Assembly (NCBI GenBank): GCA_002269645.1
Contig: NIVC01000386.1
Coordinates: 434,001-498,000, forward strand
Reading direction: 5' to 3'
DNA: 64,000 nucleotides
Source of the DNA: Macrostomum lignano
Lineage: Eukaryota
This document shows, one piece after another, positions 15,502 to 42,263 of the stretch. The notes beneath the pieces are model-generated. The model saw only the letters and a list, made by a program, of their open reading frames with translations. It searched no databases and was not told the DNA's origin. Position numbers and translations under genes: made by a program. The number at the start of each line of letters is the position of its first letter. Positions within the stretch are counted from its first letter, which is position 1.

Positions 15502-15792
15502 TCAGCACCTGGGCAAAGCGCTCCGCCTGGCCCTTGGTCGCCGTGTGGAATAGCGTGAGATGTGCCGGATGCCGTTGGACCTGACGAACTCAGCGAACTC
15601 GGCTGGAGCGAATTGAAGCCCGTTGTCCGACACCAAAGTCCTCGGTAGGCCGAGACGAGAGAAGACTTCTCGCAGGCAGTTGATCGCCCTGCTCATCCTG
15701 TGCACCTCTGGCCACTTGCTGTGCGCGTCGACCTGGACCAAGGTCCACGGGTCCCCCGAAGTCGAAGTGTAACCGCTCCCAACAAGGCTCAA
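15502..15792 (-). mobile_element. Ty3/Gypsy LTR-retrotransposon integrase relic
   Basis: VDAHSKWPEV..INCLREVFSRLGLPRTLVSDNGLQF..EFAEFVRSNGIRHI is a typical Gypsy rve motif series; degenerate. Confidence 0.85.
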
Positions 15793-15821
15793 TCGGGGAA
15801 ACTACCTACCTTTGCTTGATG

Positions 15822-16857: not shown

Positions 16858-17695
16858 TGGGGAACCGGGGAGGGGTAGAGAGAATCGAGGAGGGGATGAA
16901 GGAATCTGGGAAGGGAAGGGGGAATCGGAGAGGGAAAGAGGGAATCGGGGAAAAGAAGAGGGAATTGAGAAGGGGAAAAGGGAATCGGGGAGGGGTAGAG
17001 AGAATCGAGGAGGGGATGAAGGAATCTGGGAAGGGAAGGGGGAATCGGAGAGGGAAAGAGGGAATCGGGGAAAAGAAGAGGGAATTGAGAAGGGGAAAGG
17101 GAATCGGGGAGGGGATGAGGGAATCTGGGAAGGGAAGGGGGAATCGGAGAGGGGAAGAGGGAATCGGGGAAAAGAAGAGGGAATTGGGAAGGGGAAAAGG
17201 GAATCGGGGAGGGGATGAGGGAATTGGGGAGGGGAAAAGGGAATCAGGGAGGGGATGAGGGAATCTGGGAAGGGAAGGGGGAATCGGAGAGGGGAAGAGG
17301 GAATCGGGGAAAAGAAGAGCGAATTGGGAAGGGGAAAAGGGAATCGGGGAGGGGATGAGGGAATTGGGGAGGGGAAAAGGGAATCGGGGAGGGGAAGAGG
17401 GAATCTGGGAAGGGAAGGGGGAATTGGAAAGGGGAAGAGGGAATCGGGGAAAAGAAGAGGGGATCGGGGAAAAGAAGAGGGAATTGGGAAGGGGAAAAGG
17501 GAATCGGGGAGGGGATGAGGGAATTGGGGAGGGGAAAAGGGAATCGGGGAGGGGATGAGGGAATCTGGGAAGGGAAGGGGGAATCGGAGAGGGGAAGAGG
17601 GAATCGGGAAAAGAAGAGGGAATTGGGGAGGGGAAAAGGGAATCGGGGAGGGGAAGAGGGAATCGGGGAGGGGAAAAGGGAATCGGGAGGGGAGA
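16858..17695. repeat. Purine-rich degenerate repeat of about 19-20 bp (gggaatcggggaggggaaaa-like)
   Basis: Almost purely G/A on the + strand. Confidence 0.93.
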
Positions 17696-18005
17696 GAAAT
17701 AATCGCGAAGAGAATAAAAGCCGTCGTTTCTAAACCGCAAGCAGTGACTCAGTTTACAGATAAAGTATTTTATCGGCAAATTTTAATTGCTGGGAGTCCT
17801 CAAGCCTTCGTCACTTAAGAATTTATTATTCGAAGAACAAGCCAACAAAGTGAAAGCAGATTTACAGGTGCTGCAGATTTTTAGCACAGTTTACAAAGCG
17901 CAATACAAGCAAAATTAGTTTGCTTCGTATGAAAATGCGAAAGACAGGAACTCCAAAACACCGATTGAGTCTGGCAAACCCGATTGATGAAGAATGAAGC
18001 TGTGA

Positions 18006-21000
18006 TTACAGCAGCATGTCGGCAAAGTACTGATCGAACTCCTCCTCTCTGAAAGCGGATTTGAAAGGCGAAGAAACTGCAGTGAGAAACCTCGGTTTCC
18101 ACGGCAGAGACCAGCTAACCTGCAGGAATTCCCACCTGCCCCCCCCCCCCCGAGACCAGCTAACCTGCAGGAATTCCCACCTGCCCCCCCCCGAGACCAG
18201 CTAACCTGCAGGCATTCTCACCTGCCCCCCCCCCAGAGACCAGCTAAGCTGCAGGCATTCCACCTGCCCCCCCCCCCAGAGACCAGCTAAGCTGCAGGCA
18301 TTCCCACCTGCCCCCCCCCGAGACCAGCTAAGCTGCAGGCATTCCCACCTGCCCCCCCCCAGAGACCAGCTAAGCTGCAGGCATTCCCACCTGCCCCCCC
18401 CCCAGAGACCAGCTAAGCTGCAGGCATTCCCACCTGCCCCCCCCCCCCCAGAGACCAGCTAAGCTGCAGGCATTCCCACCTTCCCCCCCCTAGAGACCAG
18501 CTAAGCTGCACAAAATCACACCTGGACGCGCCCTCATCTTCCACAGCCGGAGCTGGTTGTCGCCAAATTTCGCTCGCGTCAGCAGCTACCGCGTCTCCGG
18601 GCGGCTCCGCTGCTGCCTGCTGCTGCTCTGCTGCCTGCCGGATGGCGCGGATCCCCGCCAGGACTTCGTCCTCAGCCTCCGTATCGGCGGCTGCGTCAGC
18701 TTCGGCTTTGGCTTGCAGCGGCTGCGTTGCCGACTCGGAAAGACGCTGCCGCTTGGCCTCGCGTCTGCGGTGCCTTCGGGTTCGGCATGCGGCGGGTTAG
18801 GGTGCCGAGGTGATGATGGCGAGGTGATGATGCTGAGGTGATTACACTGAGGTGATGATGCTGAGGTGATGATGCTGAGGTGATGATGCTGAGGTGATGA
18901 TGCTGAGGTGATTACACTGAGGTGATGATGCTGAGGTGATTACACTGAGGTGATGATGCTGAGGTGATTACACTGAGGTGATGATGCTGAGGTGATGATG
19001 CTGAGGTGATTACACTGAGGTGATGATGCTGAGGTGATGATGCTGAGGTGATGATGCTGAGGTGATTACACTGAGGTGATGATGCTGAGGTGATTACACT
19101 GAGGTGATGATGCTGAGGTGATTACACTGAGGTGATGATGCTGAGGTGATTACACTGAGGTGATGATGCTGAGGTGATGATGCTGAGGTGATTACACTGA
19201 GGTGATGATGCTGAGGTGATTACACTGAGGTGATGATGCTGAGGTGATGATGCTGAGGTGATTACACTGAGGTGATAATGGCGAGGTGATGATGCTGAGG
19301 TGATGATGCTGAGGTGATTACACTGAGGTGATAATGGCGAGGTGATGATGCTGAGGTGATGATGCTGAGGTGATGATGCTGAGGTGATGATGCTGAGGTG
19401 ATGATGCTGAGGTGATGATGCTGAGGTGAGGATGCTGAGGTGAGGATGCTGAGGTGAGGATGCTGAGGTGATGATGCTGAGGTGATGAGTTAATTAATTT
19501 AAGGTGATGCTAACCAAAGGTAAAGATTTGAGCAGACTAGTTAATGACGCTAAGCAGCTGCACCTGTCAATCACTCACTTTTTCTTATAGTTGAGCCGTG
19601 CCGAGCAGTCCGGGCAGAGGCGCAGCTTCACCAGCGCATTTTTTGTTTCTCCGCCCTCGGTGTAGCGAAAGTTCACCTCCCAGCTGACCAGGCCGTCAGC
19701 CTGCGGACGGTTAAAATTAGTTCCAATGATTACAGCTAGCTTCCATGATGATGAAGAAACAAAAAGGCTGGGATGGGGGGTCGATTTCACAAGCCCGAAA
19801 CTTCCTATCGTGGAATTCGAGTTGAGTTAACAAAAAATGACAGCAGTACACATGACCAGAGGTGAGGATGCTGAGGTGAGGATGCCCTAGTGAGGATGTT
19901 GAGGTGAGGATGCTGAGGTGAGGATGCTGAGGTGAGGATATTGAGGTGAAGATGCTGGGGTGAGGATGCTGAGGTGAGGATGCTGAGGTGAAGATGCTGA
20001 GGTGAGGATGCTGAGGTGAGGATATTGACGTGAAGATGCTGAGGTGAGGATGCTGAGGTGAGGATGCTGAGGTGAGGATGCTGAGGTGAGGATGCTGAGG
20101 TGAGGATGCTGAGGTGAGGATGCTGAGGTGAAGATGCTGAGGTGAGGATGCTGAGGTGAGGATACTGAGGTGAAGATGCCCTAGTGAGGATGCTGAGATG
20201 AGGATGCTGAGGTGAGGATGCCCTAGTGATGATGCTGGGAGGGTGCTAAGGTAGGGATTCTGAGGTGGTCTTAACCACAGCTGTGAGCAGCCTCATAGCG
20301 AGGCACTCACCTGCTCGCAGCGCTTCCCGCCGCAGGCGAACTGCCCCCTGCCGGACAGAACCTCAGCCTCTGTGCGCCATCGCAGGCCGACCCGGCCCTC
20401 CTTGTAGCCCCTCAGGTCGGCAATGCAGTACTCCTTGTACAGCTTGTCCCAGTAGCGCTTGGCGAGCCGCTGCTCCCAGCTACCGGCCTCCTCGGAGCCG
20501 CCGTCCCACACGAACCGGTGGTGCTCCCTGATGATGTCGATGTCTCGCTTGTCGCGCGAGGCGTCCCTTTTGAAGTCAGCGTAGCTGCCGCCGAAGTACC
20601 TGGAAATTGGATGGCGCAGATGGGGCTTTTGATCTAAGCTCCGTGCATGGACCTGTGCTCACCGGAGCCGCGCCTGCGACACCAGCCGAAACCCGAATCC
20701 CGATTGGACGATTGGCTTTGATTTTGAAGATAAGGGAGGGTTGTGACACCCGATTTTGAGGATAAGGGAGGGTTGTGACACCCGATTTTGAGGATAAGGG
20801 AGGGTTGTGACACCCGATTTTGAGGATAAGGGAGGGTTGTGACACCCGATTTTGAGGATAAGGGAGGGTGCTGACACCCGATTTTGAGGATAAGGGAGGG
20901 TGCTGACACCCGATTTTGAGGATAAGGGAGGGTTGTGACACCCGATTTTGAGGATAAGGGAGGGTGCTGACACCCGATTTTGAGGATAAGGGAGGGTTGT

Positions 21001-21921
21001 GACACCCGATTTTGAGGATAAGGGAGGGTTGTGACACCCGATTTTGAGGATAAGGGAGGGTGCTGACACCCGATTTTGAGGATAAGGGAGGGTGCTGACA
21101 CCCGATTTTGAGGATAAGGGAGGGTTGTGACACCCGATTTTGAGGATAAGGGAGGGTGCTGACACCCGATTTTGAGGATAAGGGAGGGTTGTGACACCCG
21201 ATTTTGAGGATAAGGGAGGGTTGTGACACCCGATTTTGAGGATAAGGGAGGGTGCTGACACCCGATTTTGAGGATAAGGGAGGGTGCTGACACCCGATTT
21301 TGAGGATAAGGGAGGGTTGTGACACCCGATTTTGAGGATAAGGGAGGGTGCTGACACCCGATTTTGAGGATAAGGGAGGGTTGTGACACCCGATTTTGAG
21401 GATAAGGGAGGGTTGTGACACCCGATTTTGAGGATAAGGGAGAGTGCTGACACCCGAGTTGAAGACAAGGGAGGCAAAGCTGCTGATTACTGCGAGCTTA
21501 GTCAATTACCAGTGGGCTATGCAAGTTAAGCAGAGATGGCTACGGTTAGTACGCAGCTGAATAGGCTGCTTGTTTACCAGCATGCGGACGGCTACCTGAT
21601 GTAGTTGTTCACCAGCATCTTGTGCCTCGAATAGGCGTCCATCGCCAGCAGCTGCTGCCTCCGAGCGCCGGCCTCTTCTCGACAGGCACCGTCGGCGACT
21701 GCCACGCCGCCGCTCCGCCGCGGTGCACCAAAACCGGATGTTGACGAGGCAGCAGCCGCCCTTGCCTCATCGCGGGGACGCGAGCGCTTCCGGTTGGACA
21801 CCGAAGCGAGCCGCACGGAGGCGGCGTCCTCCGAGGCCGCCTGGCTGACGGAGTCCTCGAAACCGAAGTCCGACTGCCAGTCATCGGGCCCGACGTCGTT
21901 CGCCGTTGGCAACGGCTCGGC
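18006..21921 (-). CDS. FRA10AC1: Protein FRA10AC1 homolog (spliceosome-associated), 5 exons; start codon not genomically evident
   Basis: Exons 21921-21596, 20599-20311, 19700-19579, 18773-18522 and 18048-18006, all GT-AG with consistent phases (1032 nt). Motifs REEA..R..LLAMDAYSRH..VNNYIRYFGG, HRFVWD, WEQRLAKRYWDKLYKEYCIADL, GLRWRTEAEVLSGRGQFACG, SWEVNF..KNALVKLRLCPDCS and EEEFDQYFADMLL*. Confidence 0.95.
18105..18505. repeat. 41-45-bp minisatellite in FRA10AC1 intron 4
   Basis: Unit gagaccagctaagctgcaggcattcccacctg(c)n, about 9 copies. Confidence 0.95.
18805..19490. repeat. 14-bp minisatellite in FRA10AC1 intron 3
   Basis: Interleaved gaggtgatgatgct and gaggtgattacact units. Confidence 0.95.
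19858..20240. repeat. 14-bp minisatellite in FRA10AC1 intron 2
   Basis: gaggtgaggatgct units, related to the intron 3 array. Confidence 0.95.
20722..21460. repeat. 32-bp minisatellite in FRA10AC1 intron 1
   Basis: gataagggagggttgtgacacccgattttgag with a tgct variant, about 23 copies. Confidence 0.97.
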
Positions 21922-21940
21922 CTGCGAAGTGGGTTGGGGA
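21922..21940 (-). promoter_or_regulatory. Unpaired 3' splice acceptor (putative SL trans-splice site) of FRA10AC1
   Basis: Sense strand ...cccctccccaacccacttcgcag|GCC GAG CCG; no convincing upstream coding exon or donor between it and the preceding gene's polyA signal. Confidence 0.6.
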
Positions 21941-22925
21941 GGGGCGGAACCTGTGGCTGAGGAGGAGCGCAACGGCTGGGGACGAGCGGAACCTGTGGCT
22001 GGGAGGGGCGGAGCCTGTGGCTGGGGCGGAACCTGTGGATGGGGGCGGAACCTGTGGCTGAGGGCGGAACCTGTGGCTGAGGGCGGAACCTGTGGCTGGG
22101 GGCGGAACCTGTGGCTGGGGAGGGGGGAATGTTGACTGGGGGCGGAACCTGTGGCTGGGGGCGGAACCTGTCGCTGGGGCGGAACCTGTGGCTGGGGAGG
22201 GGCGGAATGGTGACTGGGGGCGGAACCTGTGGCTGGGGAGGGGCGGAACGGTGGCTGGGGGCGGAACCTGTGGCTGGGGGCGGAACCTGTGGCTGGGGCG
22301 GAACCTGTGGCTGGGGCGGAATGGTGGCTGGGGGCGGAACCTGTGGCTGGGGAGGGGCGGAATGGTGACTGGGGGCGGAACCTGTGGCTGGGGCGGAACC
22401 TGTGGCTGGGGAGGGGCGGAATGGTGACTGGGGGCGGAACCTGTGGCTGGGGGCGGAACCTGTGGCTGGGGGCGGAACCTGTGGCTGGGTTCGGAACCTG
22501 TGGCTGGGGGCGGAACCTGTGGCTGGGGGCGGAACCTGTGACTGGGGGCGGAACGGTGACTCGGGGCGGAACCTGTGGCTGGGGGCGGAACCTGTGGCTG
22601 GGGGTGGAACCTGTGGCTGGGGGCGGAACCTGTGACTGGGGCGGAACGGTGACTCGGGGCGGAACCTGTGGCTGGGGGCGGAACCTGTGGCTGGGGAGGG
22701 GCGGAACGGTGATTGTGGCGGAACCTGTGGCTGGGGGCGAAAACTGTGGCTGGGGAGGGGCGGAACGGTGACTGGGGGCGGAACCTGTGGCTGGGGGCGG
22801 AACCTGTGGCTGGGGGCGGAACCTGTGGCTGGGGTGGAACCTGTGGCTGGGGTGGAACCTGTGGCTGGGGGTGGAACCTGTGGCTGGGGTGGAACCTGTG
22901 GCTGGGGGCGGAACCTGTGATTGAG
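21935..22925. repeat. G-rich minisatellite of about 19-20 bp (ggggcggaacctgtggctg) in the zinc-finger/FRA10AC1 spacer
   Basis: Direct tandem array with composite variants. Confidence 0.95.
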
Positions 22926-23070
22926 GAGGGGTGGACAAGAAAAACAAGTGGCTATATTTTTCATAAAAAGTGCCATTACAGCAACATATAAAATGAGCAG
23001 AGCCAACAGAAATCACAAAGCCAAACATGCCAATTCGGGTCAGATTCAGACTCAGATGAGTGCAGCAGTT

Positions 23071-23076
23071 TTTATT
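23071..23076 (-). terminator. Putative AATAAA polyadenylation signal of the zinc-finger gene
   Basis: tttatt on the + strand, about 800 nt past the stop at 23866 in AT-rich UTR-like sequence. Comparable signals lie at 33457-33462 (NDUFB9) and 17822-17827 (FRA10AC1). Confidence 0.5.
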
Positions 23077-23207
23077 ATTTTTATCAACAAATACAGGCAG
23101 CAAAATGCAATCCAAATATGGTTCAAAGCACACAGAGCGGAGAGTCAGAAAAGCTACGAGCTGCTCATTGATTGCTTCGTAGAAACCGTGCATGGGATGA
23201 AACTGAC

Positions 23208-23705
23208 GGGCGAATGACTGAGTGGTGCCGGGGCAAATGACTGAGTGGTGCCGGGGCGAATGACTGAGTGGTGCCCGAGCGAATGACTGAGTGGTGCCGA
23301 GCGAATGGCTGAGTGTGCCGAGCAAATGGCTGAGTGTGCCGAGCGAATGACTGAGTGGTGACGGGGCGAATGACTGAGTGGTGCCGGGGCGAATGACTGA
23401 GTGGTGCCGAGCGAATGACTGAGTGGTGACGGGGCAAATGACTGAGTGGTGCCGAGCGAATGACTGAGTGGTGACGGGGCAAATGACTGAGTGGTGACGG
23501 GGCGAATGACTGAGTGGTGCCGAGCGAATGACTGAGTGGTGACGGGGCAAATGACTGAGTGGTGCCGAGCGAATGACTGAGTGGTGACGGGGCAAATGAC
23601 TGAGTGGTGACGGGGCAAATGACTGAGTGGTGACGGGGCAAATGACTGAGTGGTGACGGGGCAAATGACTGAGTGGTGCCGGGGCGAATGACTGAGTGGT
23701 GCCGG
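23208..23705. repeat. Minisatellite of about 23 bp (aatgactgagtggtgacggggc-like)
   Basis: About 21 tandem copies within the putative 3' UTR. Confidence 0.95.
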
Positions 23706-23865
23706 GAGAACTGGAGCAGAGTGCAAAAGTACAGGACTGACAGGCTAATAACAGAGCATTCCTTGGCCTCGGCTGTTCGACAATCGAAAACAAAAAGAAG
23801 CGCAATACAAATAAGTTATAAATTAAATGTTAATTTTATGATTGGATGAGCTGCTTTGCTAACTG

Positions 23866-26800
23866 TCACTGATCCGTGAGAGCAGTCCCAGTCCCAGTCC
23901 CAGTTGCTGCAGCCGATGACTCCACGGGAGGCGCATCGGCAGGCGGCTCCGACATCGTCGTCGCTGCCGCCTCCGAGGCAGTCGACAAGGCCGCCACCGA
24001 TGTCGGCACTCGCCGCTTCGTCCGCAGCTGCTGCTGCAGCGAGTCGCTGTCCTCGCTGTCCGCGTCCTGGCTGAAGCAGAGCCCCGGCTGCTCCGCCTCC
24101 TCCTGAGCCGCCGCCGGCTTCTGCCGCTTCTGCTGCTGACGGCGGGCCACCGCGTGCAGCTCGTTGTCGTCCGCTAGCGCGGCGTTTTTCGCCGCTGTCG
24201 CCGAGTCCTCGTCGGAGCTGCAGGTTGTCGCAGCGGCAGCGGCAGCGGCGGCCACAGCGGCGGAGGTCCTGGCGCGCCGCTTCCGCAGCACTTTGCCGCG
24301 CTGGCGCTGTCGCTTCGCGTCCTGCACCGGCGACTCCGAAGCGCCACCGACCGCGGCGTCCTCGGCGTCGGCCCCGAGTTCGACTTCATCGTCCGCTCGC
24401 CGATCCGAGGCGGTCGAGTCCAGAGAGGACGAAATCGAGCGGCGCTGCGGCTGGCGCGACTTCCGCTTGAGACTCGCTGACGGCCCCTGCTGGGCCTGGG
24501 CGGCCTCGGCCGGCTGCTGGGGATGCCGGGGCTGCTGAAGCTGCCCACCGGCCGCGTCGGACTTCTGACGTCGCCGGGCTGTCCGCTTGGTGCGCCGGTT
24601 GCTGACGACTGCGGCGCCGCTGCCACCAGCTGGTCCAGCGGCGGGGTCGGCGTCGGCAACCGGCAGCGGGGCCTTGAAGCCCGGTGGCTGCGCCTGCGTG
24701 CTGCCCGGACCGCCGCCGCCGATGCCGCCTTCGCCTGTTGTTGAAGCCGCGGCTGCTGCGGCTGCCGCTGCGGCCGCCTTCCTCTTGCGCTTCCTCTCGC
24801 CGTCAGCGCCGCCGCCACCGGAGGCGGAGCAGATCAGCAGGTGCTCATCAGCAGCCTCGCTACTATCGAAGATTCTGCCGCAGTTGTGGCAGGTGAGCTG
24901 CGGGTGGCTGGCCCTGCGGTGCTGCAGCAGCAGGTGCTGCATGCGGAAGGACAGGGTGCACACGCCGCACTGGTAGGCGTCGCTGGCAGGGTCGTGGCAG
25001 TCCACCTTCAAATCCTTCAGGCGAACCTGCGGGTCAAGGAGGGAAAAGCAGATTCAATCAAGTGGCAATCAATCAATCAATCAATTAACTAATACCGGTA
25101 AATCGATTAATCAACCAACTAATCAATCAAATAACTAATCAAACACATGTAAATCAATCAGTTAATCAACCAATCAATCAAGCAATCAGCTAATCAGTCA
25201 ATCAATAAACTAATCAATCGATTAATCAATTAACTAATCAACCAATCGATATCTATCTATCAATCAACAAATCACTCAATCATCCAATCAGTCATTCAAT
25301 CAACCAATCAATCAATCATCTAAGTAGTCAAATAATCCATCAATCAATCAATCAAGCCCAGTACCCACAGAACACCCAATTAACAAAGACTAATTGCCTC
25401 ACCTTGTGTTGAGAGATCACGTGATCGGACAGGTTGCGCACCTGCTTCTGGCACACGGGGCACTCTTTAGTCGCCCGGGGCGACACGTGGATCTGCTTGA
25501 TGTGGCTGAGCAGGTTTTGCTTGCCTTTCAGGCTGGCCTGGCAGTGCGGGCAGGGGAAGCAGCGGCTCTCGGAGGTCTGGCCGTGCACCCGCTGCCTGTG
25601 CACCGCCAGGAGCCGCTCGCTGCTGAACACCTTCTTGCACATTTCGCAGGAAATCTCGTCCCAGACCTCGGCTGCGACCGATTTGGAGGCTGCGGCGGGG
25701 ACAGCGGACGCCGGCAGCGGCTCCTTGTGCACCGCGGCCATGTGGTTGCGCAGCAGGTAGAGGCGCTTGAAGTGGTGGCCGCAGAGGCCGCACTGGTGCG
25801 ACTCGACTGGGTGTACATTGTGAAGGTGGACCCGCAGTCGGTACTCCGAGTTGAACTCCTTGCTGCAGGCCTGCGGTGCGACGGTTTGGGGGTCCGTTTG
25901 GGATTATCAGGCAGCCCAGCAACTGAGGATCTGGGAGGCTGGCCCAGCAACTGAGGATCTGGGAGGTTGGCCCAGCAACTGAGGATCTGGGAGGTTGGCC
26001 CAGCAACTGAGGATCTGGGAGGCTGGCCCAGCAACTGAGGATCTGGGAGGCTGGCCCAGCAACTGAGGATCAGGGAGGCTGGCCCAGCAACTGAGGATCT
26101 GGGAGGCTGGCCCAGCAACTGAGGATCTGAAAGGTTGGCCCAGCAACTGAGGATCTGGGAGGCTGGCCCAGCAACTGAGGATCTGGGAGGCTGGCCCAGC
26201 AACTGAGGATCTAGGAGGCTGGCCCAGCAACTGAGGATCTGAAAGGTTGGCCCAGCAACTGAGGATCTGGGAGGCTGGCCCAGCAACTGAGGATCTGGGA
26301 GGCTGGCCCAGCAACTGAGGATCTGGAAGGTTGGCCCAGCAACTGAGGATCTGGGAGGTTGGCCCAGCAACTGAGGATCTGGGAGGCTGGCCCAGCAACT
26401 GAGGATCTGGGAGGCTGGCCCAGCAATTGAGGATCTGGGAGGCTGGCCCAGCAACTGAGGATCTGGGAGGCTGGCCCAGCAACTGAGGATCTGGGAGGCT
26501 GGCCCAGCAACTGAGGATCTGAAAGGTTGGCCCAGCAACTGAGGATCTGGGAGGCTGGCCCAGCAATTGAGGATCTGGGAGGCTGGCCCAGCAATTGAGG
26601 ATCTGGGAGGCTGGCCCAGCAACTGAGGATCTGGGAGGCTGGCCCAGCAACTGAGGATCTGGGAGGCTGGCCCAGCAACTGAGGATCTGAAAGGTTGGCC
26701 CAGCAACTGAGGATCTGGGAGGCTGGCCCAGCAACTGAGGATCTGGGAGGCTGGCCCAGCAACTGAGGATCTGGGAGGCTGGCCCAGCAACTGAGGATCT

Positions 26801-27338
26801 GAAAGGTTGGCCCAGCAACTGAGGATCTGAAAGGTTGGCCCAGCAACTGAGGATCTGGAAGGTTGGCCCAGCAACTGAGGATCTGGGAGGCTGGCATAGC
26901 AACTGAGGTTCTGGGAGGCTGGCCTAGCAACTGAGGATCTGGGAGGCTGGCCTAGCAACTGAGTAAATCAAAGCAGGCAGGCGATTTAACCTCGCAGGGA
27001 TGCGTGCCGGTATCAGAGAAGCCGTGCAGGTAGTGCATGTGCTGGATCAGTTTGATGTGGTGGTTGAACAGGTTGACGCCGTCGCACAGATGGCAGCGCA
27101 GCAGCTTGGTGTGTTTGGCCATGACGTGGGCTGTCAGCTCGCGCAGGATGCCGTCGCTCTCGGCTACTTTGATGCGTCGCCGTCTGCTGCCACCGCCACC
27201 GCAGTTGAAGTCGTCAGCGCCACTCCGAGCGTCAGAGTCGGAGCAGAACGGGCAGCTGACGGGGTTTTGAGCAGGTTGAAAATCAGTTACTCGAAATTTA
27301 CATATCTGCAAACAGACAGAGACAGACAGACGACAGGC

Positions 27339-27391
<53 letters not shown>

Positions 27392-27394
27392 GGC

Positions 27395-27435
<41 letters not shown>

Positions 27436-30400: not shown

Positions 30401-32235
30401 GTGGCTATAGATGGGGATCAGTGGCTATAGATGGGGATCAGTGGCTATAGATGGGGATTAGTGGCTATAGATGGGGATCAGTGGCTATAGATCAGTGGCT
30501 ATAGATCAGTGGCTATAGATGGGGATCAGTGGCTATAGATGGGGATCAGTGGCTATAGATGGGGATCAGTGGCTATAGATGGGGATCAGTGGCTATAGAT
30601 GGGGATCAGTGGTTATAGATCAGTGGCTATAGATGGGGATCAGTGGCTATAGATGGGGATCAGTGGCTATAGATGGGGATCAGTGGCTATAGATGGGGAT
30701 CAGTGGCTATAGATGGGGATCAGTGGCTATAGATGGGGATCAGTGGCTATAGATGGGGATCAGTGGCTATAGATGGGGATCAGTGGCTATAAATGGGGAT
30801 CAGTGGCTATAGATCAGTGGCTATAGATGGGGATCAGTGGCTATAGATGGGGATCAGTGGCTATAGATGGGGATCAGTGGCTATAGATGGGGATCAGTGG
30901 CTATAAATGGGGATCAGTGGCTATAGATCAGTGGCTATAGATGGGGATCAGTGGCTATAGATGGGGATCAGTGGCTATAGATGGGGATCAGTGGCTATAA
31001 ATGGGGATCAGTGGCTATAGATCAGTGGCTATAGATGGGGATAAGTGGCTATAGATGGGGATCAGTGGCTATAGATGGGGATCAGTGGCTATAGATGGGG
31101 ATCAGTGGCTATAGATGGGGATCAGTGGCTATAAATGGGGATCAGTGGCTATAGATGGGGATCAGTGGCTATAGATGGGGATTAGTGGCTATAGATGGGG
31201 ATCAGTGGCTATAGATCAGTGGCTATAGATGGGGATCAGTGGCTATAGATGGGGATCAGTGGCTATAGATGGGGATCAGTGGCTATAGATGGGGATTAGT
31301 GGCTATAGATGGGGATCAGTGGCTATAGATGGGGATCAGTGGCTATAGATCAGTGGCTAAGCGGGCAAGTGAACAGGGAGATCTCCGGCCACTCACTCGG
31401 CTCCTCAACTGTCAGCACCTCGTGCCGCTCGGCACGGACATCGACCAGCTCCACGGGCCGGAAGCCGGGCGGCGGCCTGCCGAAGCGCATGCCCAGCAGG
31501 CGCCTGTAGGGCTGCTGCATGAGGAAGGCGCGGCCTTCAAGCAGGCCACCGGATTCGTCCATCAGGCTGTCCAGCTGCCGCACGTAGGCGTCCGAGACTA
31601 CGCAGAGGCCGCGAACGGGCCACCTGGCCTGGTCCATGGTGGCGAAGGTGGCCGGGTCATCCGCCAGGTACTTGCCCCAGGTGGTGGCGCCGCGGGCAGC
31701 GTCATGGCCGAGCCCACCTGCGGCAGGCGGTCGCAGCCGGAGGCCGGCTCGAACAGCTCGCGCAGAACTCGAACGAGCAGGTGAGCATGGACAGGTAGAC
31801 GGAGCTCGGGTCAGACGACTCGGCAGCGGCCAGCCCGGCCAGAAGGCGGCGGTCCCTGTCCGACGGGCGCTGCCTGGCGAACCTGGCCAGGAAGCCGGGC
31901 TTCGGGCGCACCAGGCCGCGCCGGTGCAGCAGCAGGCTGGTGAGGTTCAGCGGCGCCCCGGCCGAGGACGGCGCCGTTGACGGCTCGGACAGTCGGCGCC
32001 GGATGTCCGAGTCGTCCGGACAGCAGGTGAGGGAGCCGAGACTGCGCCGGATGTAGCAGTCGGGGGGCACCGGATGCACTGCGTTGGGGCCGCGCTGCTG
32101 CGGTGACGGCGAGCGGCGGCGGCGTCGGCGGCGAGGCTGCGGCATCTCCTGAAAGGATGAAGCGTCGCCTGCGGGGGCAGCTGCGGGCTCGGGGGGCGGC
32201 TCAGCTGGCTGCTCTTCGTCCTGGTCTGACGACAT
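23866..32235 (-). CDS. Large multi-C2H2 zinc-finger protein (about 1300 aa) with an unrecognised N-terminal region; 6 exons; two apparent 1-nt deletions in exon 1
   Basis: Exons 32235-31397, 29462-28844, 28346-27866, 27305-26991, 25870-25403 and 25026-23866 have compatible phases once 2 nt are restored in exon 1 (near 31770 and 31695). Fingers: CHLCDG..HIKLIQHMHYLH, CEACSKEF..LRVHLHNVH, CGLCGHHF..LRNHMAAVH, CEMCKKVF..LAVHRQRVH, CPHCQASL..LLSHIKQIH, CPVCQK..LSDHVISQH and CGVCTLSF..LLQHRRASH. The 27866/27305 join uses a weak donor (TTG|GTGACA), so this could be two genes. Confidence 0.75.
25070..25355. repeat. Imperfect (AATC)n microsatellite in zinc-finger gene intron 5
   Basis: Runs of aatcaatc. 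Confidence 0.9.
25912..26962. repeat. 28-bp minisatellite in zinc-finger gene intron 4
   Basis: aactgaggatctgggaggctggcccagc, about 37 copies. Confidence 0.97.
27310..27456. repeat. (GACA)n/(GGCA)n microsatellite, resuming after the SINE at 27819-27850
   Basis: Direct observation. Confidence 0.95.
27457..27818 (+). mobile_element. tRNA-derived SINE inserted in a microsatellite
   Basis: A-box TAGCCCAGCGG (27465-27475), B-box GGCTCGATTCC (27507-27517) and tail taataaaaaaaa; the body matches 57860-58068. Confidence 0.75.
28635..28790 (+). mobile_element. Degenerate tRNA-derived SINE with a CORE-like segment
   Basis: A-box-like TGGCGCAGCG (28640), B-box GGTTCGATTCT (28707) and tgtgtccttgagcaagacac (28737-28756). 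Confidence 0.5.
29620..31355. repeat. 20-bp minisatellite in zinc-finger gene intron 1
   Basis: ctatagatggggatcagtgg, about 85 copies. Confidence 0.97.
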
Positions 32236-32257
32236 TGCGCTGCGGGAAGGAGGAGGC

Positions 32258-33257
32258 GGCTAATGGCGATTGCAGATAGGCTAATGGCGATTCCAGATAG
32301 GCTAATGGTGATTCCAGATAGGCTAATGGTGATTCCAGATAGGCTAATGGTGATTCCAGATAGGCTAATGGTGATTCCAGATAGGCTAATGGCGATTGCA
32401 GATAGGCTAATGGTGATTCCAGATAGGCTAATGGTGATTCCAGATAGGCTAATGGCGATTCCAGATAGGCTAATGGTGATTCCAGATAGGCTAATGGCGA
32501 TTGCAGATAGGCTAATGGTGATTCCAGATAGGCTAATGGTGATTCCAGATAGGCTAATGGCGATTCCAGATAGGCTAATGGTGATTCCAGATAGGCTAAT
32601 GGTGATTCCAGATAGGCTAATGGTGATTCCAGATAGGCTAATGGTGATTCCAGATAGGCTAATGGCGATTGCAGATAGGCTAATGGTGATTCCAGATAGG
32701 CTAATGGCGATTGCAGATAGGCTAATGGTGATTCCAGATAGGCTAATGGCGATTGCAGATAGGCTAATGGCGATTCCAGATAGGCTAATGGTGATTCCAG
32801 ATAGGCTAATGGCGATTCCAGATAGGCTAATGGTGATTCCAGATAGGCTAATGGCGATTGCAGATAGGCTAATGGCGATTCCAGATAGGCTAATGGTGAT
32901 TCCAGATAGGCTAATGGTGATTCCAGATAGGCTAATGGTGATTCCAGATAGGCTAATGGTGATTCCAGATAGGCTAATGGTGATTCCAGATAGGCTAATG
33001 GTGATTCCAGATAGGCTAATGGCGATTGCAGATAGGCTAATGGTGATTCCAGATAGGCTAATGGTGATTCCAGATAGGCTAATGGCGATTCCAGATAGGC
33101 TAATGGTGATTCCAGATAGGCTAATGGTGATTCCAGATAGGCTAATGGTGATTCCAGATAGGCTAATGGTGATTCCAGATAGGCTAATGGCGATTCCAGA
33201 TAGGCTAATGGTGATTCCAGATAGGCTAATGGTGATTCCAGATAGGCTAATGGCGAT
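32258..33257. repeat. 21-bp minisatellite in the NDUFB9/zinc-finger spacer
   Basis: ggctaatggtgattccagata, about 47 copies, ending about 15 nt before the acceptor ...ccttcccgcag|cgcaATG. Confidence 0.97.
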
Positions 33258-33685
33258 ATTGAACGGGCTAACACAGATTTTACAAGCATATTTAGCTAAT
33301 TTGAATTCTATTGAAAGCTACTGAATCTGCTAGACTGGCCATAAAAGTAGGAATTGAACATCCTGAATGAGTAAGAAGAGTAAATAGAACAAAGACAGCA
33401 CGGTGGTAGGCAAGGAGCCTAATGAAGAATCCTATTTGTATTAATAATTATATAGATTTATTTAGTATGGTTTCCACCGCGTACAATCGAATACACCGTC
33501 GTTAATAGCTAAGATGGTAAAGAATTTCCTGTTTTTCTTAAATCTACATTTTTAAGCTACTAGAAGTAGTCAGGTGGATTATTAGACACTCTTAGCCTAC
33601 ATAAAAGAAACTAAGCGATCTGATACGTTGGAGGGGAACTGTTGGTATCCAGCGCAGTCATCCGCACACACTGGGAGCTGGCCAG

Positions 33686-34162
33686 TCAGCCCATCGGCCC
33701 CGTCCACTCGCCGGTGTCCCTGGCGTCTTGGCCGTATTTTTGGTGCCAGCGCTCGATGTACTCCTTCTTGCGCTGCTCCCGCCTGGCAAAGTAGTCCGGG
33801 TACTGCGCCTTCTCCAGCGGGTGCCACAGGTCCAGCAGCGCGTCCGGGTAGTACTGCCAGCGGCCGAAGGCCACGCCGCCGGGGTCGTTAGGCCAGCGGA
33901 AGGGGAAGTAAGACTTCTTGGCCTGCAGCTCCGAGTAGGCGGACTCCAGCAGGGCCTTGGCCTTGATCGGGTCCTCAACTTCGCGGTTCTCGTCGAAGCG
34001 CTGGCGCAGCAGCACGGCGTGGTAGCGGTAGTCCAGGCGCTCGTGGTGCTTGGCCCGCACCTCGTATAGGGCGGCCTTGTACAGCCGGCACACCTTCTGC
34101 GCGTGCGACAGGTAGCTGGTGCGCAGGTAGGCTGGGAGCGGCGGCCCGGGGAGGGTCGGCAT
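33686..34162 (-). CDS. NDUFB9: NADH dehydrogenase (ubiquinone) 1 beta subcomplex subunit 9 (LYR family), intronless
   Basis: LSHAQKVCRLYKAAL..YRYHAVLLRQRFDENREVED..A..LLE..F.WP.DPGGVAFGR..LDLWHPLEKAQYPDYFARREQRKKEY. Confidence 0.95.
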   Translation of the reverse strand: MPTLPGPPLPAYLRTSYLSHAQKVCRLYKAALYEVRAKHHERLDYRYHAVLLRQRFDENREVEDPIKAKALLESAYSELQAKKSYFPFRWPNDPGGVAFGRWQYYPDALLDLWHPLEKAQYPDYFARREQRKKEYIERWHQKYGQDARDTGEWTGPMG

Positions 34163-34284
34163 GGCTGCTCAGCTGAGTCTGCTGCCGATTGCTCTTTCAG
34201 CTTGGGTAACTGCTAGGGCTGGGATCCGAGTGCGGCAGCCGCTGCTGCTGCATGGGGTGGACAGATGCGGTTGATCTATCAGGT

Positions 34285-34635
34285 GTGGTATGGGGTCTAT
34301 CAGATTGCGGTATGGGATCTATCAGATTGAGGTATGGGATCTATCAGATTGCGGTATGGGATCTATCAGATTGAGGTATGGGATCTATCAGATTGGGGAA
34401 TGGGATCTTCACATTGGAGTATGGGATCTATCAGATTGGGGTATGGGATCTTCAGATTGAGGTATGGGATCTTCAGATTGGGGTATGGGATCTTCATATT
34501 GAGGTATGGGATCTTCAGATTGGGGTATGGGATCTTCAGATTGAGGTATGGGATCTTCAGATTGGAGTATGGGATCTTCAGATTGGGGTATGGGATCTTC
34601 AGATTGGAGTATGGGATCTTCAGATTGGGGTATGG
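34285..34635. repeat. 21-bp minisatellite upstream of NDUFB9
   Basis: gtatgggatcttcagattg(a/g)g units. Confidence 0.93.
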
Positions 34636-35094
34636 TGTTTTCAATCGTATAAAACAACTGAGATGATTAGGTAAATAATAAAAGCAGCAAGACGATTGCA
34701 CTGTTAGAGCCACCTATTAATCTATGCATAGCAGTGCTAAAATGTAATGTAATCATTCATTAGTCACACAATTGAATAAAATTTGCACAGACTGGGGATA
34801 TCGCCACAAACTGCCTATGATAGAAAACGAGTCGCAGTATCATTATATAAAAGACACGGGTTGGCTGTAAAGGCGAAACGCCGCAATGAAGCATGGCTAC
34901 AGTGGACTAATGGCAGCCGCACATGCTACTCATAGTAATATTAGCAGCATATATGAATAAAACGAGAAATAACAGCGTATAACAGTTTAACAACAGGATA
35001 CAATGTTACAGCTCGGCAGGGCGAACAGGGTAAAACTGATAATAGGTCAATCTTGAAGCTCCATCAGCTAAAACGTTTTGTGGATTCAGCATTC

Positions 35095-35375
35095 TCTGGG
35101 ATCTGGGGGATTTTAAATCTCAAGCTGAGGATTTGGGAGATTTAAATCCCAAGCTAAGGATCTGGGAGATTTAAATCCCAAGTTGAGGATCTGGGAGAGT
35201 TAAATCCCAAGTTGAGGATCTGGGAGAGTTAAATCCCAAGTTGAGGATCTGGGAGATTTAAATCCCAAGTTGAGGATCTGGGAGAGTTAAATCCCAAGTT
35301 GAGGATCTGGAAGATTTAAATCCCAAGTTGAGGATCTGGGAGAGTTAAATCCCAAGTTGAGGATCTGGAAGGATT
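35095..35375. repeat. 29-bp minisatellite in the PPP1R2/NDUFB9 spacer
   Basis: gaggatctgggagatttaaatcccaagtt, about 9 copies. Confidence 0.93.
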
Positions 35376-35506
35376 AATTTAAGAATGAGGATCAGGGATT
35401 TTTGAAACCCACCAGAGCCTCCTAAATCTACAAAATTTGGCTAAGACTCATAAGTGGGGATTCGGGACGCTGGTGCCGCCGCATCACATTTTCCGTTCGA
35501 ATCAGA

Positions 35507-37382
35507 TCAGCCGTCGTCGGGCCTCTCCCCGCCGGCCGAGGCCTCGCCGTCCTCGTCCTCATCGGACTGCATCCTGGCCCTGAGCACGGCCTCGAACTCG
35601 TTGTAGTGCATCTTCCGCTTCAGCCGGAACTGCCGCCGGCGCTCTCGCTCAGCGGCGTCCAGCAGCTCGTCCTCGGCGTCCAAGTCGTGCAGGTCGGCCG
35701 GGCCGCCGAAGCCGCGTCGATTCGGCGAGGCGGACTCGCCGCCGCCAGCAGCAGCCGCGGCACCGGCATCGCCGTCCTCAGCAGCCGCGGCCTCCTCGAG
35801 ACGCTCCATCAAAGCGTCTGGCGACACGGCGTCGGTGAAGCTGGTCCGGCGCTGCTGCGGCTGCTTCGCCGGCTGCTCGGAGGCCGCCGGGCAGCTCCTC
35901 GAGTCGGCGTCGCCTTCGTCGCCGCTGGCAGTCGAAGCCGCGTCGCTGGACAGCGCCGGCTCGTAAGGGGTCGGCGCTTCGTCCACCTGCCGGGGCGGTG
36001 ATGCACAGATTGGTCTAGATCCCATACAGATTCATCTAGATCCCATACTGATTCACCAAGATCCCATACTGATTCATCTAGATCCCATACAGATTCACCT
36101 AGATCCCATACTGATTCATCTAGATCCCATACAGATTCACCTAGATCCCATACTGATTCATCTAGATCCCATACAGATTCACCTAGATCCCATACTGATT
36201 CATCTAGATCCCATACAGATTCACCAAGATCCCATACTGATTCACCTAGATCCCATACAGATTCACCAAGATCCCATACTGATTCACCTAGATCCCATAC
36301 AGATTCACCTAGATCCCATACAGATTCACCTAGATCCCATACTGATTCACCTAGATCCCATACAGATTCACCTAGATCCCATACAGATTCACCTAGATCC
36401 CATACTGATTCACCTAGATCCCATACAGATTCACCTAGATCCCATACTGATTCACCTAGATCCCATACAGATTCACCTAGATCCCGTACAGATTCACCTA
36501 GATCCCATACAGATTCACCTAGATCCCGTACAGATTCACCAAGATCCCATACAGATTCACCTAGATCCCATACAGATTCACCAAGATCCCATACAGATTC
36601 ACCTAGATCCCGTACAGATTCACCTAGATCCCATACAGATTCACCAAGATCCCATACTGATTCACCTAGATCCCGTACAGATTCACCTAGATCCCATACA
36701 GATTCACCTAGATCCCATACAGATTCACCTAGATCCCATACAGATTCACCTAGATCCCATACAGATTCACCTAGATCCCATACTGATTCACCTAGATCCC
36801 GTACAGATTCACCTAGATCCCATACAGATTCACCTAGATCCCATACAGATTCACCAAGATTCCATACAGATTCATCTAGTTTCTATAGACCCTCTCAGAT
36901 CATAATACAGATTCCACCGATTCCTATACCCTCTCCCAAATCCCGTAAGAATCCCTCAGATCCGATACAGATTTCCCGGATCCTGTAAATTTCCCAGAAT
37001 CTTAGAACTTCTCAGGCCCTAAAGATTGCTCAGATCCCAGACTACACTGATCTTATAGATTCCCCAGATCCCAGTTTACCTTTATCTTATAGACAGCTCA
37101 GACCCTATGGAATCTTGTGAATTCTCAGACACTACACACGTGACATAAGCCGACGCTCACCTTCATGTGCCCATAGTCCTTATCCGCAGGATGGTAAGTC
37201 TTCAAGATGTTCATTTCGTCCCACTGGAACTCTTTCCTGGCGTCGGTGTCATCAGAGTTGCCGATAGCGGCAGCAGAACTGGCAGCTTCCTGACTGTCCT
37301 CGTGCTCATCAGTGCTGATGGATTTGCACTTGAGGATGCCCTTCTTTGGCCGGGCATTCAGCGGCGGCGGGCTGTTTGACAT
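35507..37382 (-). CDS. PPP1R2: Protein phosphatase 1 inhibitor-2 (2 exons, 233 aa)
   Basis: Exons 37382-37161 and 35986-35507 (phase 0). Motifs PKKGILK, KEFQWDEMNILKTYHPADKDYGHMK|VDEAPTPY and FRLKRKMHYNEF. The ATG is directly preceded by tcagtcag|. Confidence 0.95.
36015..36880. repeat. 21-bp minisatellite in the PPP1R2 intron
   Basis: gatcccatacagattcaccta, about 40 copies. Confidence 0.97.
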
Positions 37383-42027: not shown

Positions 42028-42263
42028 TTGGCACCGGGTCCTGGTGTGACCATAAACGCACCCTCTAATGTCCCAGTGTAACTCCGTGCTGATGGACGCT
42101 TGGCCAGGGAGTAGTCTGGTCGCTAACGGTTCCCCTTGCGCTTTTGGGTCCCCCCGCAGGGTGGTATTTTGCTTTTTGGGGGCCTGCCGCTTGGTTTGGG
42201 GTTGCGGCCTTGCGGCTCTTTGCCTGTGTTCTGCAGGAAGTCCCACCTTTTTACTTCCAGCCA

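What the first reader, a model, noticed from the sequence alone, without database searches (positions are those of the whole stretch)
18006..37382. Putative four-gene SL trans-spliced operon: PPP1R2 - NDUFB9 - zinc-finger - FRA10AC1
Four functionally unrelated housekeeping-type genes lie on the same strand with stop-to-next-start gaps of only 1345, 1451 and 1945 bp, largely occupied by 3' UTR and one or two minisatellites, leaving little room for promoters. Each first coding exon is preceded by a pyrimidine-rich acceptor with no evident partner donor: tcagtcag|ATG (37382), ccccatgcag|cagcag or nearby AGs (34250-34165), ccttcccgcag|cgcaATG (32240) and ccacttcgcag|GCC (21921). AATAAA signals follow three of the genes. 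SL trans-splicing and operons are established in flatworms; that this particular cluster is one is inference.
Basis: partly seen in the sequence, partly recalled or inferred. Interest (0 to 1): 0.75.

Follow-up and report, generated by a model that had tools for sequence, protein, structure and literature searches.

The report
Flatworm four-gene trans-spliced operon
Four unrelated housekeeping genes of the flatworm Macrostomum lignano lie head to tail and are most likely copied into one long RNA that is cut into separate messages by adding a shared leader, an arrangement already well documented and largely annotated for this species.

Summary
The window is Macrostomum lignano assembly Mlig_3_7, contig NIVC01000386.1. 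Four same-strand genes sit at the stated places: PPP1R2/IPP-2, NDUFB9, a lineage-specific C2H2 zinc-finger gene and FRA10AC1. Stop-to-start gaps are 1344, 1450 and 1944 bp, and 46-76% of each gap is minisatellite.

The operon reading is well supported but not new. In GenBank, the coding sequences of the zinc-finger gene and FRA10AC1 are 'partial' and begin at or one base after the predicted AG acceptors. That pipeline places trans-spliced 5' ends at peaks of leader-carrying reads.

FRA10AC1 has a conserved 93-codon N-terminal stretch with no ATG. It starts in phase at the acceptor, both here and in a related species, where an in-frame TAG lies directly upstream. The 35-nt leader ends in ATG and supplies the start codon.

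GenBank locus tags carry transcriptional-unit prefixes. These link IPP-2 with the zinc-finger gene, and the zinc-finger gene with FRA10AC1.

Repeat-subtracted spacers are 432-725 bp, under the published 1 kb operon threshold.

The first gene also has an annotated cis-spliced upstream exon, so it is probably promoter-proximal. The NDUFB9 acceptor is inferred only. No leader-carrying reads could be inspected directly.

The parts
39762..39808 (-). Annotated upstream exon of IPP-2 (encodes MQYQANLAGWQGAQP; donor gtaagc), in the AT-rich region that probably holds the operon promoter
   Evidence: Joining 39808-39762, 37386-37161 and 35986-35507 reproduces GenBank PAA84187.1 (250 aa) exactly. GC is 31.5% over 38-42 kb, against 67% in the NDUFB9 coding sequence.
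37382..37420 (-). Cluster of acceptors in front of IPP-2: TTCCAG|37414, caatcAG|37386 and gtcAG|37382
   Evidence: TTCCAG matches the published trans-splice motif [T/C]TNCAG. The partial coding sequence of the L002 paralogue starts 2 nt after it. Acceptor 37386 is the one used by the cis-spliced upstream exon.
35507..37382 (-). Gene 1, PPP1R2 / protein phosphatase inhibitor 2 (exons 37382-37161 and 35986-35507; the intron holds a 21-bp minisatellite at 36015-36879)
   Evidence: Pfam IPP-2, E 7.8e-30; tandem repeats.
34163..35506 (-). Spacer 1 (1344 bp), with arrays at 35099-35368 and 34287-34635; 725 bp is non-repeat; no AATAAA or ATTAAA
   Evidence: The same spacer is 2489 bp in both paralogues, with 703 bp non-repeat.
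34241..34249 (-). Most likely leader acceptor(s) for NDUFB9: catgcAG|CAG|CAG| (exon start at 34247, 34244 or 34241)
   Evidence: Inference only. These sites have the best pyrimidine tract (12-14 of 20). From them the leader's AUG gives a 15-17-codon upstream reading frame that stops before the main ATG. Every AG downstream of 34218 gives an overlapping frame of 66-185 codons.
33686..34162 (-). Gene 2, NDUFB9 (complex I LYR subunit B22), single exon, 158 aa
   Evidence: Pfam Complex1_LYR, E 4e-8. 56-58% identical to the best flatworm NDUFB9 hits. The protein is identical on all three contigs.
32240..33685 (-). Spacer 2: AATAAA at 33462-33457, then a 21-bp minisatellite at 32258-33257 that ends 18 nt before the acceptor
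   Evidence: 1446 bp in total, 1000 bp of it array and 446 bp non-repeat. About 200 non-repeat bp separate the poly(A) signal from the acceptor. The paralogue spacers are 690 and 879 bp, each with 432 bp non-repeat.
32220..32241 (-). Two zinc-finger-gene acceptors: cccgcAG|32239, and gaccAG|32220 (where the leader ATG is in frame)
   Evidence: The L002 paralogue protein PAA79372.1 (partial) starts 1 nt after the first acceptor. The L001 paralogue protein PAA55040.1 (partial) starts at the first base after the second. Both proteins were rebuilt exactly.
23866..32235 (-). Gene 3, Macrostomum-specific C2H2 zinc-finger protein (exons 32235-31397, 29462-28844, 28346-27870, 27255-26991, 25870-25403, 25026-23866)
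   Evidence: Pfam zf-C2H2 / zf-Di19 on the called product. Apart from one weak hit of unknown origin (E 9e-10, 25% identity), only Macrostomum homologues were found. The model starting at ATG 31637 gives 1076 aa, the same length as the database gene call. Two 1-bp deletions lie in exon 1.
21922..23865 (-). Spacer 3: array at 23207-23706, AATAAA at 23076-23071, then array at 21986-22931 running up to the acceptor
   Evidence: 1944 bp in total, 1480 bp of it array and 464 bp non-repeat. About 150 non-repeat bp separate the poly(A) signal from the acceptor. The L001 spacer is 746 bp with 448 bp non-repeat.
18006..21921 (-). Gene 4, FRA10AC1 (exons 21921-21596, 20599-20311, 19700-19579, 18773-18522, 18048-18006); it has no genomic start codon, so the AUG comes from the leader
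   Evidence: The model equals GenBank PAA84184.1 ('partial', 343 aa) exactly. The coding sequence starts at the first base after cttcgcAG| in the window and L001; the L002 protein has the same N-terminus. The first in-frame ATG is codon 94. The N-terminus is conserved in a related species, with a TAG directly upstream.
17782..17827 (-). AATAAA (17827-17822) and ATTAAA (17787-17782) after FRA10AC1; probable 3' end of the operon
   Evidence: Downstream lie an 88%-pyrimidine array (16860-17693) and transposon remnants, with no nearby same-strand gene.

Best explanation
This is a Macrostomum lignano operon resolved by spliced-leader (SL) trans-splicing.

Proposed mechanism:
- RNA polymerase II starts in the AT-rich region upstream of IPP-2. 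This region lies between the IPP-2 acceptor cluster (about 37.4 kb) and the opposite-strand LINE-like element at 42.1 kb. One annotated 5' exon lies at 39808-39762.
- Transcription reads through IPP-2, NDUFB9, the zinc-finger gene and FRA10AC1.
- Each upstream cistron is cleaved and polyadenylated.
- Each downstream cistron receives the capped 35-nt leader (…TTGCATG) at an AG acceptor. About 150-200 unique bases, plus a variable minisatellite, separate the upstream poly(A) signal from that acceptor.
- For FRA10AC1, and for one zinc-finger isoform, the leader's terminal AUG is the start codon.

Shown here: the gene identities and exon structures; annotated 5' ends that coincide with AG acceptors; the lack of a genomic start codon for FRA10AC1; transcriptional-unit names shared between neighbouring genes; and spacers under the published threshold once repeats are subtracted.

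Inferred: a single promoter, continuous transcription across all three spacers in this copy, and the position of the NDUFB9 acceptor.
For: 1. Organism and precedent. The window is M. lignano NIVC01000386.1. In this species 30% of genes are trans-spliced and 15% lie in operons. Intra-operon spacers are known to be inflated by repeats. The published criterion is a repeat-subtracted distance under 1 kb with a trans-spliced downstream gene (PMC8629364).

2. Spacers. Stop-to-start distances after subtracting tandem repeats are 725, 446 and 464 bp here, and 703, 432 and 448 bp in the paralogues. The arrays themselves vary from 258 to 1786 bp.

3. Annotated 5' ends. The GenBank annotation derives from the TBONE pipeline, which cuts transcripts at peaks of leader-carrying reads (PMC5730564). 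Its 'partial' coding sequences begin at the first base after AG for FRA10AC1 (coordinates checked in the window and L001; the L002 protein has the same N-terminus), 0-1 nt after two AGs for the zinc-finger gene, and 2 nt after TTCCAG| for IPP-2 in L002.

4. Start codon of FRA10AC1. The 93 codons before its first ATG are 64% conserved with a related species' transcript (L004). There the exon also starts in phase, straight after ttttAG, with an in-frame TAG just upstream. The leader ends in ATG. Use of the flatworm leader's AUG as initiator is established (Cheng et al. 2006, cited in PMC12582326).

5. Transcriptional-unit names. Prefixes were assigned to clusters of assembled transcriptional units before those units were cut into genes. 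Mlig005215 covers the zinc-finger gene (g2) and FRA10AC1 (g3), which are adjacent on L001. Mlig025187 covers the window's IPP-2 (g1) and the L002 zinc-finger gene (g5). Unrelated sequences can share a prefix only if one assembled RNA spanned them.

6. Boundaries. No same-strand gene lies between the cluster and the opposite-strand LINE-like element upstream. Only transposon remnants and repeats lie just downstream, with no nearby same-strand gene.
Against: - No leader-carrying reads, transcription-start data or chromatin marks could be examined directly.
- The link from annotated 5' ends to leader reads rests on the published description of the pipeline.
- In this copy FRA10AC1 (Mlig005215g4) carries a different unit prefix from IPP-2 (Mlig025187g1). 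So assembled RNA did not bridge the 1.9-kb spacer 3 here. The authors state that units often break in repeats.
- StringTie/TACO assembly can merge neighbouring genes through read-through or multi-mapped repeat reads.
- NDUFB9's name and 5' end were not visible, so its place in the unit is inferred from gene numbering and position.
- About 60% of trans-spliced M. lignano genes are not in operons. A core promoter could fit in 150-200 bp of unique spacer.
- IPP-2 has no canonical poly(A) hexamer.
- NDUFB9 has different neighbours in two parasitic flatworms.
Confidence: 0.75

Rival explanations
1. The four genes are tandem but independently transcribed. Each downstream gene has its own short promoter in the unique part of its spacer and is trans-spliced as a monocistronic transcript. 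The shared transcriptional-unit names would then reflect read-through or assembly merging.
For: About 60% of trans-spliced genes in this species are outside operons. Each spacer keeps 430-725 bp of unique sequence that is constant in length across the three copies. In the window FRA10AC1 is a separate assembled unit, and in L002 IPP-2 is a separate unit as well.
Against: Unit prefixes link IPP-2 with the zinc-finger gene and the zinc-finger gene with FRA10AC1. After removing the 3' UTR, only about 150-200 unique bases lie between poly(A) signal and acceptor, close to the roughly 100-bp mode for operon spacers. The constant length of unique spacer sequence says little, because the three copies are 94-96% identical throughout.
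Confidence: 0.17
2. The cluster is two units rather than one. IPP-2, NDUFB9 and the zinc-finger gene form one operon, while FRA10AC1 is driven separately or only partly by read-through.
For: In this copy the prefix changes between the zinc-finger gene's unit and FRA10AC1. Spacer 3 is the longest and is 76% array.
Against: On L001, where spacer 3 is only 746 bp, the zinc-finger gene and FRA10AC1 carry consecutive gene numbers in one unit. The authors say units break in repeat-rich spacers. FRA10AC1 has no start codon of its own and is trans-spliced in any case.
Confidence: 0.05
3. The genes are conventional, with undetected cis-spliced 5' non-coding exons and no trans-splicing.
For: IPP-2 does have an annotated cis-spliced upstream exon. 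Cis- and trans-splicing share acceptors in many flatworm genes.
Against: Annotated transcripts of FRA10AC1 and the zinc-finger gene start at the AG in several copies, with no upstream exon assembled. FRA10AC1 needs an added ATG in phase in two species. The species' leader ends in ATG.
Confidence: 0.03

Closest known systems
Macrostomum lignano SL trans-spliced operons (Wudarski et al. 2017, PMC5730564; Ustyantsev & Berezikov 2021, PMC8629364)
   Same: Same species and same single 35-nt leader ending in AUG. The genes are same-strand, conserved housekeeping genes. Repeats inflate the spacers, and repeat-subtracted distances are under 1 kb. The first gene is allowed to have its own 5' exon. Four-gene operons are reported; in the published count 75% of operons have two genes, 18% have three, and the largest have nine.
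   Different: Nothing essential differs. Raw spacers of 1.3-1.9 kb exceed the roughly 100-bp modal distance only because of the minisatellites. Only one of the acceptors here (IPP-2, TTCCAG) fits the enriched [T/C]TNCAG motif, which itself occurs at only about 44% of known sites.
Flatworm SL 3'-terminal AUG used as initiator methionine (Cheng, Cohen, Ndegwa & Davis 2006, J Biol Chem; cited in PMC12582326)
   Same: FRA10AC1, and the gaccAG| isoform of the zinc-finger gene, start in phase at the acceptor and lack or bypass a genomic ATG. The leader's AUG must therefore start translation.
   Different: That work was done in parasitic flatworms (Schistosoma). Here the case rests on sequence and annotation, not on a translation assay.
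Caenorhabditis elegans operons (SL2-type resolution)
   Same: A polycistronic pre-mRNA is resolved by 3' end formation coupled to leader addition at a nearby downstream acceptor. The genes are functionally unrelated housekeeping genes. The modal spacer is about 100 bp.
   Different: M. lignano has one leader and no specialised SL2. No Ur-element equivalent is known. Spacers tolerate kilobase-scale minisatellites.
Operons of parasitic flatworms (Schistosoma, Echinococcus, Hymenolepis; PMC12582326)
   Same: Leader trans-splicing resolves polycistrons. The acceptors of first genes are shared between cis- and trans-splicing, as seen here for IPP-2.
   Different: This gene combination is not conserved. 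NDUFB9 has other neighbours in Hymenolepis weldensis (SIR2 downstream) and no neighbour within 10 kb in Calicophoron daubneyi.

Membership tests
M. lignano SL-resolved operon (criteria of Ustyantsev & Berezikov 2021) | Adjacent genes share a transcriptional orientation, with no opposite-strand gene between them | tested here: met
   All four genes are on the minus strand. GenBank protein accessions run from PAA84184 (FRA10AC1) to PAA84187 (IPP-2). No other gene is called between them in the window copy.
M. lignano SL-resolved operon (criteria of Ustyantsev & Berezikov 2021) | Repeat-subtracted intergenic distance under 1 kb | tested here: met
   Measured stop to start or acceptor, the distances are 725, 446 and 464 bp after subtracting tandem repeats. 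From poly(A) signal to acceptor they are about 200 and 150 bp for spacers 2 and 3. Only tandem repeats were subtracted, not transposable elements.
M. lignano SL-resolved operon (criteria of Ustyantsev & Berezikov 2021) | The downstream gene of each pair is SL trans-spliced (leader-carrying reads at its 5' end) | tested here: inconclusive
   The evidence is indirect but strong for the zinc-finger gene and FRA10AC1: annotated 5' ends at AG in several copies, and an ATG supplied by the leader. For NDUFB9 there is only inference from its position and from the upstream-reading-frame argument.
M. lignano SL-resolved operon (criteria of Ustyantsev & Berezikov 2021) | A single promoter and one continuous pre-mRNA | not testable with these tools
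   The only evidence is shared transcriptional-unit prefixes: Mlig025187 for IPP-2 and the zinc-finger gene, Mlig005215 for the zinc-finger gene and FRA10AC1. No start-site, long-read or RT-PCR data were available.
mRNAs initiated at the SL-donated AUG | The conserved reading frame begins in phase at the acceptor, with no usable genomic ATG | tested here: met
   In FRA10AC1 the first genomic in-frame ATG is codon 94. The 93 upstream codons are conserved (64% identity over 113 aa) in L004, where TAG directly precedes the exon.
mRNAs initiated at the SL-donated AUG | The leader sequence is physically present on the mRNA | not testable with these tools
   The only related transcript recovered (L004) retains 57 nt of outron rather than the leader. 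The leader sequence itself is absent from the window, as expected.

The most novel reading that the evidence does not exclude
The most novel reading not excluded concerns the minisatellites. They abut nearly every acceptor, both trans and cis, and they make up 47% of the locus. Eleven of the 13 arrays are C-rich and G-poor on the sense strand. They might therefore be functional rather than neutral filler, for example as extended pyrimidine tracts or spacing elements that favour leader addition or 3' end formation in the operon. Their copy number, which varies several-fold between paralogous copies, would then tune expression of the downstream cistrons.
Probability: 0.07. Interest if true: 0.55.

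Novelty: already known. Interest (0 to 1): 0.15.

Why it matters
The locus is a clean, worked example of a known phenomenon, not a discovery. M. lignano operons tolerate kilobase-scale, copy-number-variable minisatellites between cistrons. In at least one cistron (FRA10AC1) the start codon is not in the genome at all and comes from the spliced leader.

There are two practical lessons:
- Gene finders that ignore trans-splicing will truncate such proteins or label them 'partial'.
- Raw intergenic distance is a poor operon criterion in repeat-rich genomes.

For M. lignano transgenesis, the result suggests that a promoter for NDUFB9, the zinc-finger gene or FRA10AC1 should be sought upstream of IPP-2, not in the spacers.

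Tried and rejected
- **Leader-bearing transcripts.** Exact look-up of NDUFB9 found only the three genome contigs. Homologue searches for FRA10AC1, the zinc-finger gene and NDUFB9 gave one related-species transcript for FRA10AC1 (L004) and none for the others. M. lignano RNA-seq assemblies appear to be missing from the collection.
- **Leader gene.** The leader sequence is not in the window at up to 3 mismatches. This is expected, because leader RNA genes lie elsewhere.
- **Rfam.** Nothing reached gathering scores. The low-threshold hits in the zinc-finger gene's introns look like chance.
- **tRNA scan.** ARAGORN called one tRNA-Arg, antisense inside the NDUFB9 coding sequence. I take it to be a false positive.
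- **Supplementary tables.** The supplements of Wudarski 2017 and Grudniewska 2018 hold none of the locus tags or gene names.
- **Meaning of gene numbers.** I first read the 'gN' suffix as position within one unit. I rejected that because the three FRA10AC1 copies are g3, g4 and g5. The number runs across all copies in a cluster of units.
- **First gene models.** My first FRA10AC1 model used an acceptor 9 nt too far downstream. My first zinc-finger models used a different intron 3. Both were corrected by matching GenBank proteins exactly.
- **Synteny.** The cluster is not conserved around NDUFB9 in Hymenolepis or Calicophoron.
- **Promoter scan.** I did not run the bacterial sigma-70 promoter and terminator scan, because it does not apply to a metazoan.


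Full report
**Identity of the window.** An exact look-up of the single-exon NDUFB9 protein found three contigs of GenBank assembly GCA_002269645.1, which is Macrostomum lignano Mlig_3_7. Locus L003 (NIVC01000386.1, 457686-478162, reversed) is contained exactly in the reverse complement of the window. L001 (NIVC01002818.1) and L002 (NIVC01000639.1) are duplicated copies. They are 94-96% identical to the window, non-coding DNA included, and differ mainly in minisatellite copy number. The assembly is known to hold extensive duplication of this kind (PMC5730564; PMC8629364).

**Check of the observation.**
- IPP-2: exons 37382-37161 and 35986-35507; Pfam IPP-2, E 7.8e-30.
- NDUFB9: 34162-33686, single exon; Complex1_LYR; 56-58% identical to the best flatworm NDUFB9 hits.
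- Zinc-finger gene: six exons, ATG at 32235, stop at 23866. Apart from one weak hit of unknown origin, homologues were found only in Macrostomum.
- FRA10AC1: five exons, 21921-18006. My final model equals GenBank PAA84184.1 residue for residue.

Stop-to-start gaps are 1344, 1450 and 1944 bp. Tandem arrays take up 619, 1000 and 1480 bp of them. Across the whole claimed interval, 13 arrays make up 47% of the DNA. AATAAA follows NDUFB9, the zinc-finger gene and FRA10AC1 but not IPP-2. The four quoted acceptors exist.

**What the literature says about this species.**
- M. lignano has a single 35-nt spliced leader, CGGTCTCTTACTGCGAAGACTCAATTTATTGCATG.
- About 30% of its genes are trans-spliced and about 15% lie in operons.
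- Once repeats are subtracted, spacers between trans-spliced genes show a mode near 100 bp. The authors state that repeats contribute substantially to distances within operons.
- Their operon criterion is a repeat-subtracted distance under 1 kb with a trans-spliced downstream gene. An operon may start with a gene that is not trans-spliced (PMC8629364).

The GenBank annotation derives from RNA-seq assemblies called 'transcriptional units'. These were clustered at 95% identity and given a shared name prefix. The TBONE pipeline then cut them into genes at peaks of leader-carrying reads and at poly(A) sites (PMC5730564).

**Evidence for trans-splicing at the predicted sites.**
- *FRA10AC1.* All three GenBank FRA10AC1 proteins are flagged 'partial' and begin AEPLPTAND…. 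That is the first codon after cttcgcAG|. The reading frame has no ATG until codon 94.
- *Related species.* A spliced transcript from a related, unidentified species (L004, Logan SRR28338165; 76% identical protein) retains 57 nt of upstream sequence. In it the exon again starts in phase straight after ttttAG, the in-frame codon before it is TAG, and the 113 N-terminal residues are 64% identical. The start codon must therefore be spliced on. The leader ends in ATG. Use of that AUG as initiator is established for flatworm leaders (Cheng et al. 2006, cited in PMC12582326).
- *Zinc-finger gene.* I rebuilt the two paralogous GenBank proteins exactly. Both are 'partial'. The other starts at the first base after gaccAG|, 19 nt further on, where the leader ATG is in frame.
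- *IPP-2.* The L002 protein is 'partial' and starts 2 nt after TTCCAG|, a perfect match to the published motif [T/C]TNCAG. The window's own IPP-2 protein (PAA84187.1) instead includes a cis-spliced upstream exon at 39808-39762, joined at AG|37386. Shared use of an acceptor by cis- and trans-splicing is common for first genes in flatworms.
- *NDUFB9.* The 5' end is not visible in the protein data. Only the CAG-CAG-CAG cluster at 34247-34241 (or 34218) lets the leader's AUG open a short upstream reading frame that ends before the main ATG. Every AG further downstream would create an overlapping frame of 66-185 codons. This is inference.

**Evidence for co-transcription.**
- On L001 the adjacent zinc-finger gene and FRA10AC1 are BOX15_Mlig005215g2 and g3.
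- The window's IPP-2 is Mlig025187g1, and the L002 zinc-finger gene is Mlig025187g5.
- Prefixes were assigned to clusters of units before cutting. Unrelated genes can share a prefix only if one assembled RNA contained both.
- The numbering fits window IPP-2, NDUFB9 and zinc-finger gene as g1-g3 and L002 NDUFB9 and zinc-finger gene as g4-g5. It also fits L001 NDUFB9, zinc-finger gene and FRA10AC1 as g1-g3 of Mlig005215. The assignments for NDUFB9 and for the window's zinc-finger gene are inferred, because names of window-encoded proteins are hidden.
- In this copy FRA10AC1 (g4) is a separate unit. This agrees with the authors' remark that units break in repeat-rich spacers.
- After subtracting tandem repeats, the spacers are 725, 446 and 464 bp here and 703, 432 and 448 bp in the paralogues. 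The arrays range from 258 to 1786 bp. From poly(A) signal to acceptor, only about 200 and 150 unique bases remain for spacers 2 and 3.
- The cluster is bounded upstream by a 31.5%-GC region and an opposite-strand LINE-like element at 42144-47650. Downstream, repeats and transposon remnants follow, with no nearby same-strand gene.

**Limits.** I could not inspect leader-carrying reads, start-site data or long reads. Assembled units can merge neighbours. Most trans-spliced genes in this species are not in operons. Independent short promoters in the unique parts of the spacers therefore cannot be excluded from sequence alone. NDUFB9 has different neighbours in Hymenolepis and Calicophoron, so there is no deep-synteny support.

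**Verdict.** My confidence is about 0.75 for a four-gene polycistronic unit, and about 0.95 that the zinc-finger gene and FRA10AC1 are leader trans-spliced. The finding is an instance of a well-described feature of this genome that is already encoded in the public annotation. Its interest is low. The only open angle is whether the sense-strand C-rich minisatellites next to the acceptors do anything.

Noticed in passing
window ~31762 and ~31696 (minus strand, zinc-finger gene exon 1): Two single-C deletions in C-runs, relative to both paralogous copies, shift the reading frame twice. The GenBank coding sequence of this copy therefore starts at an internal ATG (31637; 1076 aa against 1272 and 1278 aa). 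This is either a long-read assembly error or a decaying duplicate.
   Followed up: partly
window 18006-37382 (13 tandem arrays): Each intron and spacer carries its own distinct minisatellite (units of 4-43 bp; 47% of the region). Eleven of the 13 are C-rich and G-poor on the sense strand, and many end 18-60 nt before a 3' splice site. Array length differs 2-5-fold among the three genomic copies, while the unique spacer sequence stays constant.
   Followed up: partly
window 42144-47650 (+ strand): A LINE-like (non-LTR) retrotransposon, identified from the translated ORFs alone. It has a long ORF1, an ORF whose sequence looks like an endonuclease domain, and a 733-aa ORF that looks like reverse transcriptase plus RNase H. 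It lies on the opposite strand and bounds the AT-rich region upstream of the cluster.
   Followed up: no
window ~28680-28760 and ~27460-27545 (zinc-finger gene introns 2 and 3): Stretches that look tRNA-derived by eye (a GGTTCGAATC-like T-arm on the + strand), possibly SINE remnants. Neither ARAGORN nor Rfam calls them.
   Followed up: partly
window 34059-34157 (+): ARAGORN calls a tRNA-Arg(TCT) that lies antisense inside the NDUFB9 coding exon. It is almost certainly a false positive.
   Followed up: no
L002 16229-16984 (minus strand in the locus): A mariner-type transposase gene (HTH_48 / Transposase_1) is inserted in intron 5 of the zinc-finger gene in this paralogous copy only.
   Followed up: no
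window 15500-15800 (minus) and 12115-13004 (minus) / 54824-55249 (+): By eye, a retroelement integrase-like fragment lies downstream of FRA10AC1. Two similar ORFs (…LLWY-F-KG--NLA-P…FFQGTFA-N…) of unknown family lie on opposite strands on either side of the cluster.
   Followed up: no
window 18764-18774: FRA10AC1 exon 4 has two AG acceptors 9 nt apart. The annotated protein and the related species' protein use the upstream one (KKKHRRREAK). An older UniProt model uses the downstream one.
   Followed up: yes
window 16860-17693: A 20-bp minisatellite just downstream of the FRA10AC1 poly(A) signals is 88% pyrimidine on the sense strand.
   Followed up: no
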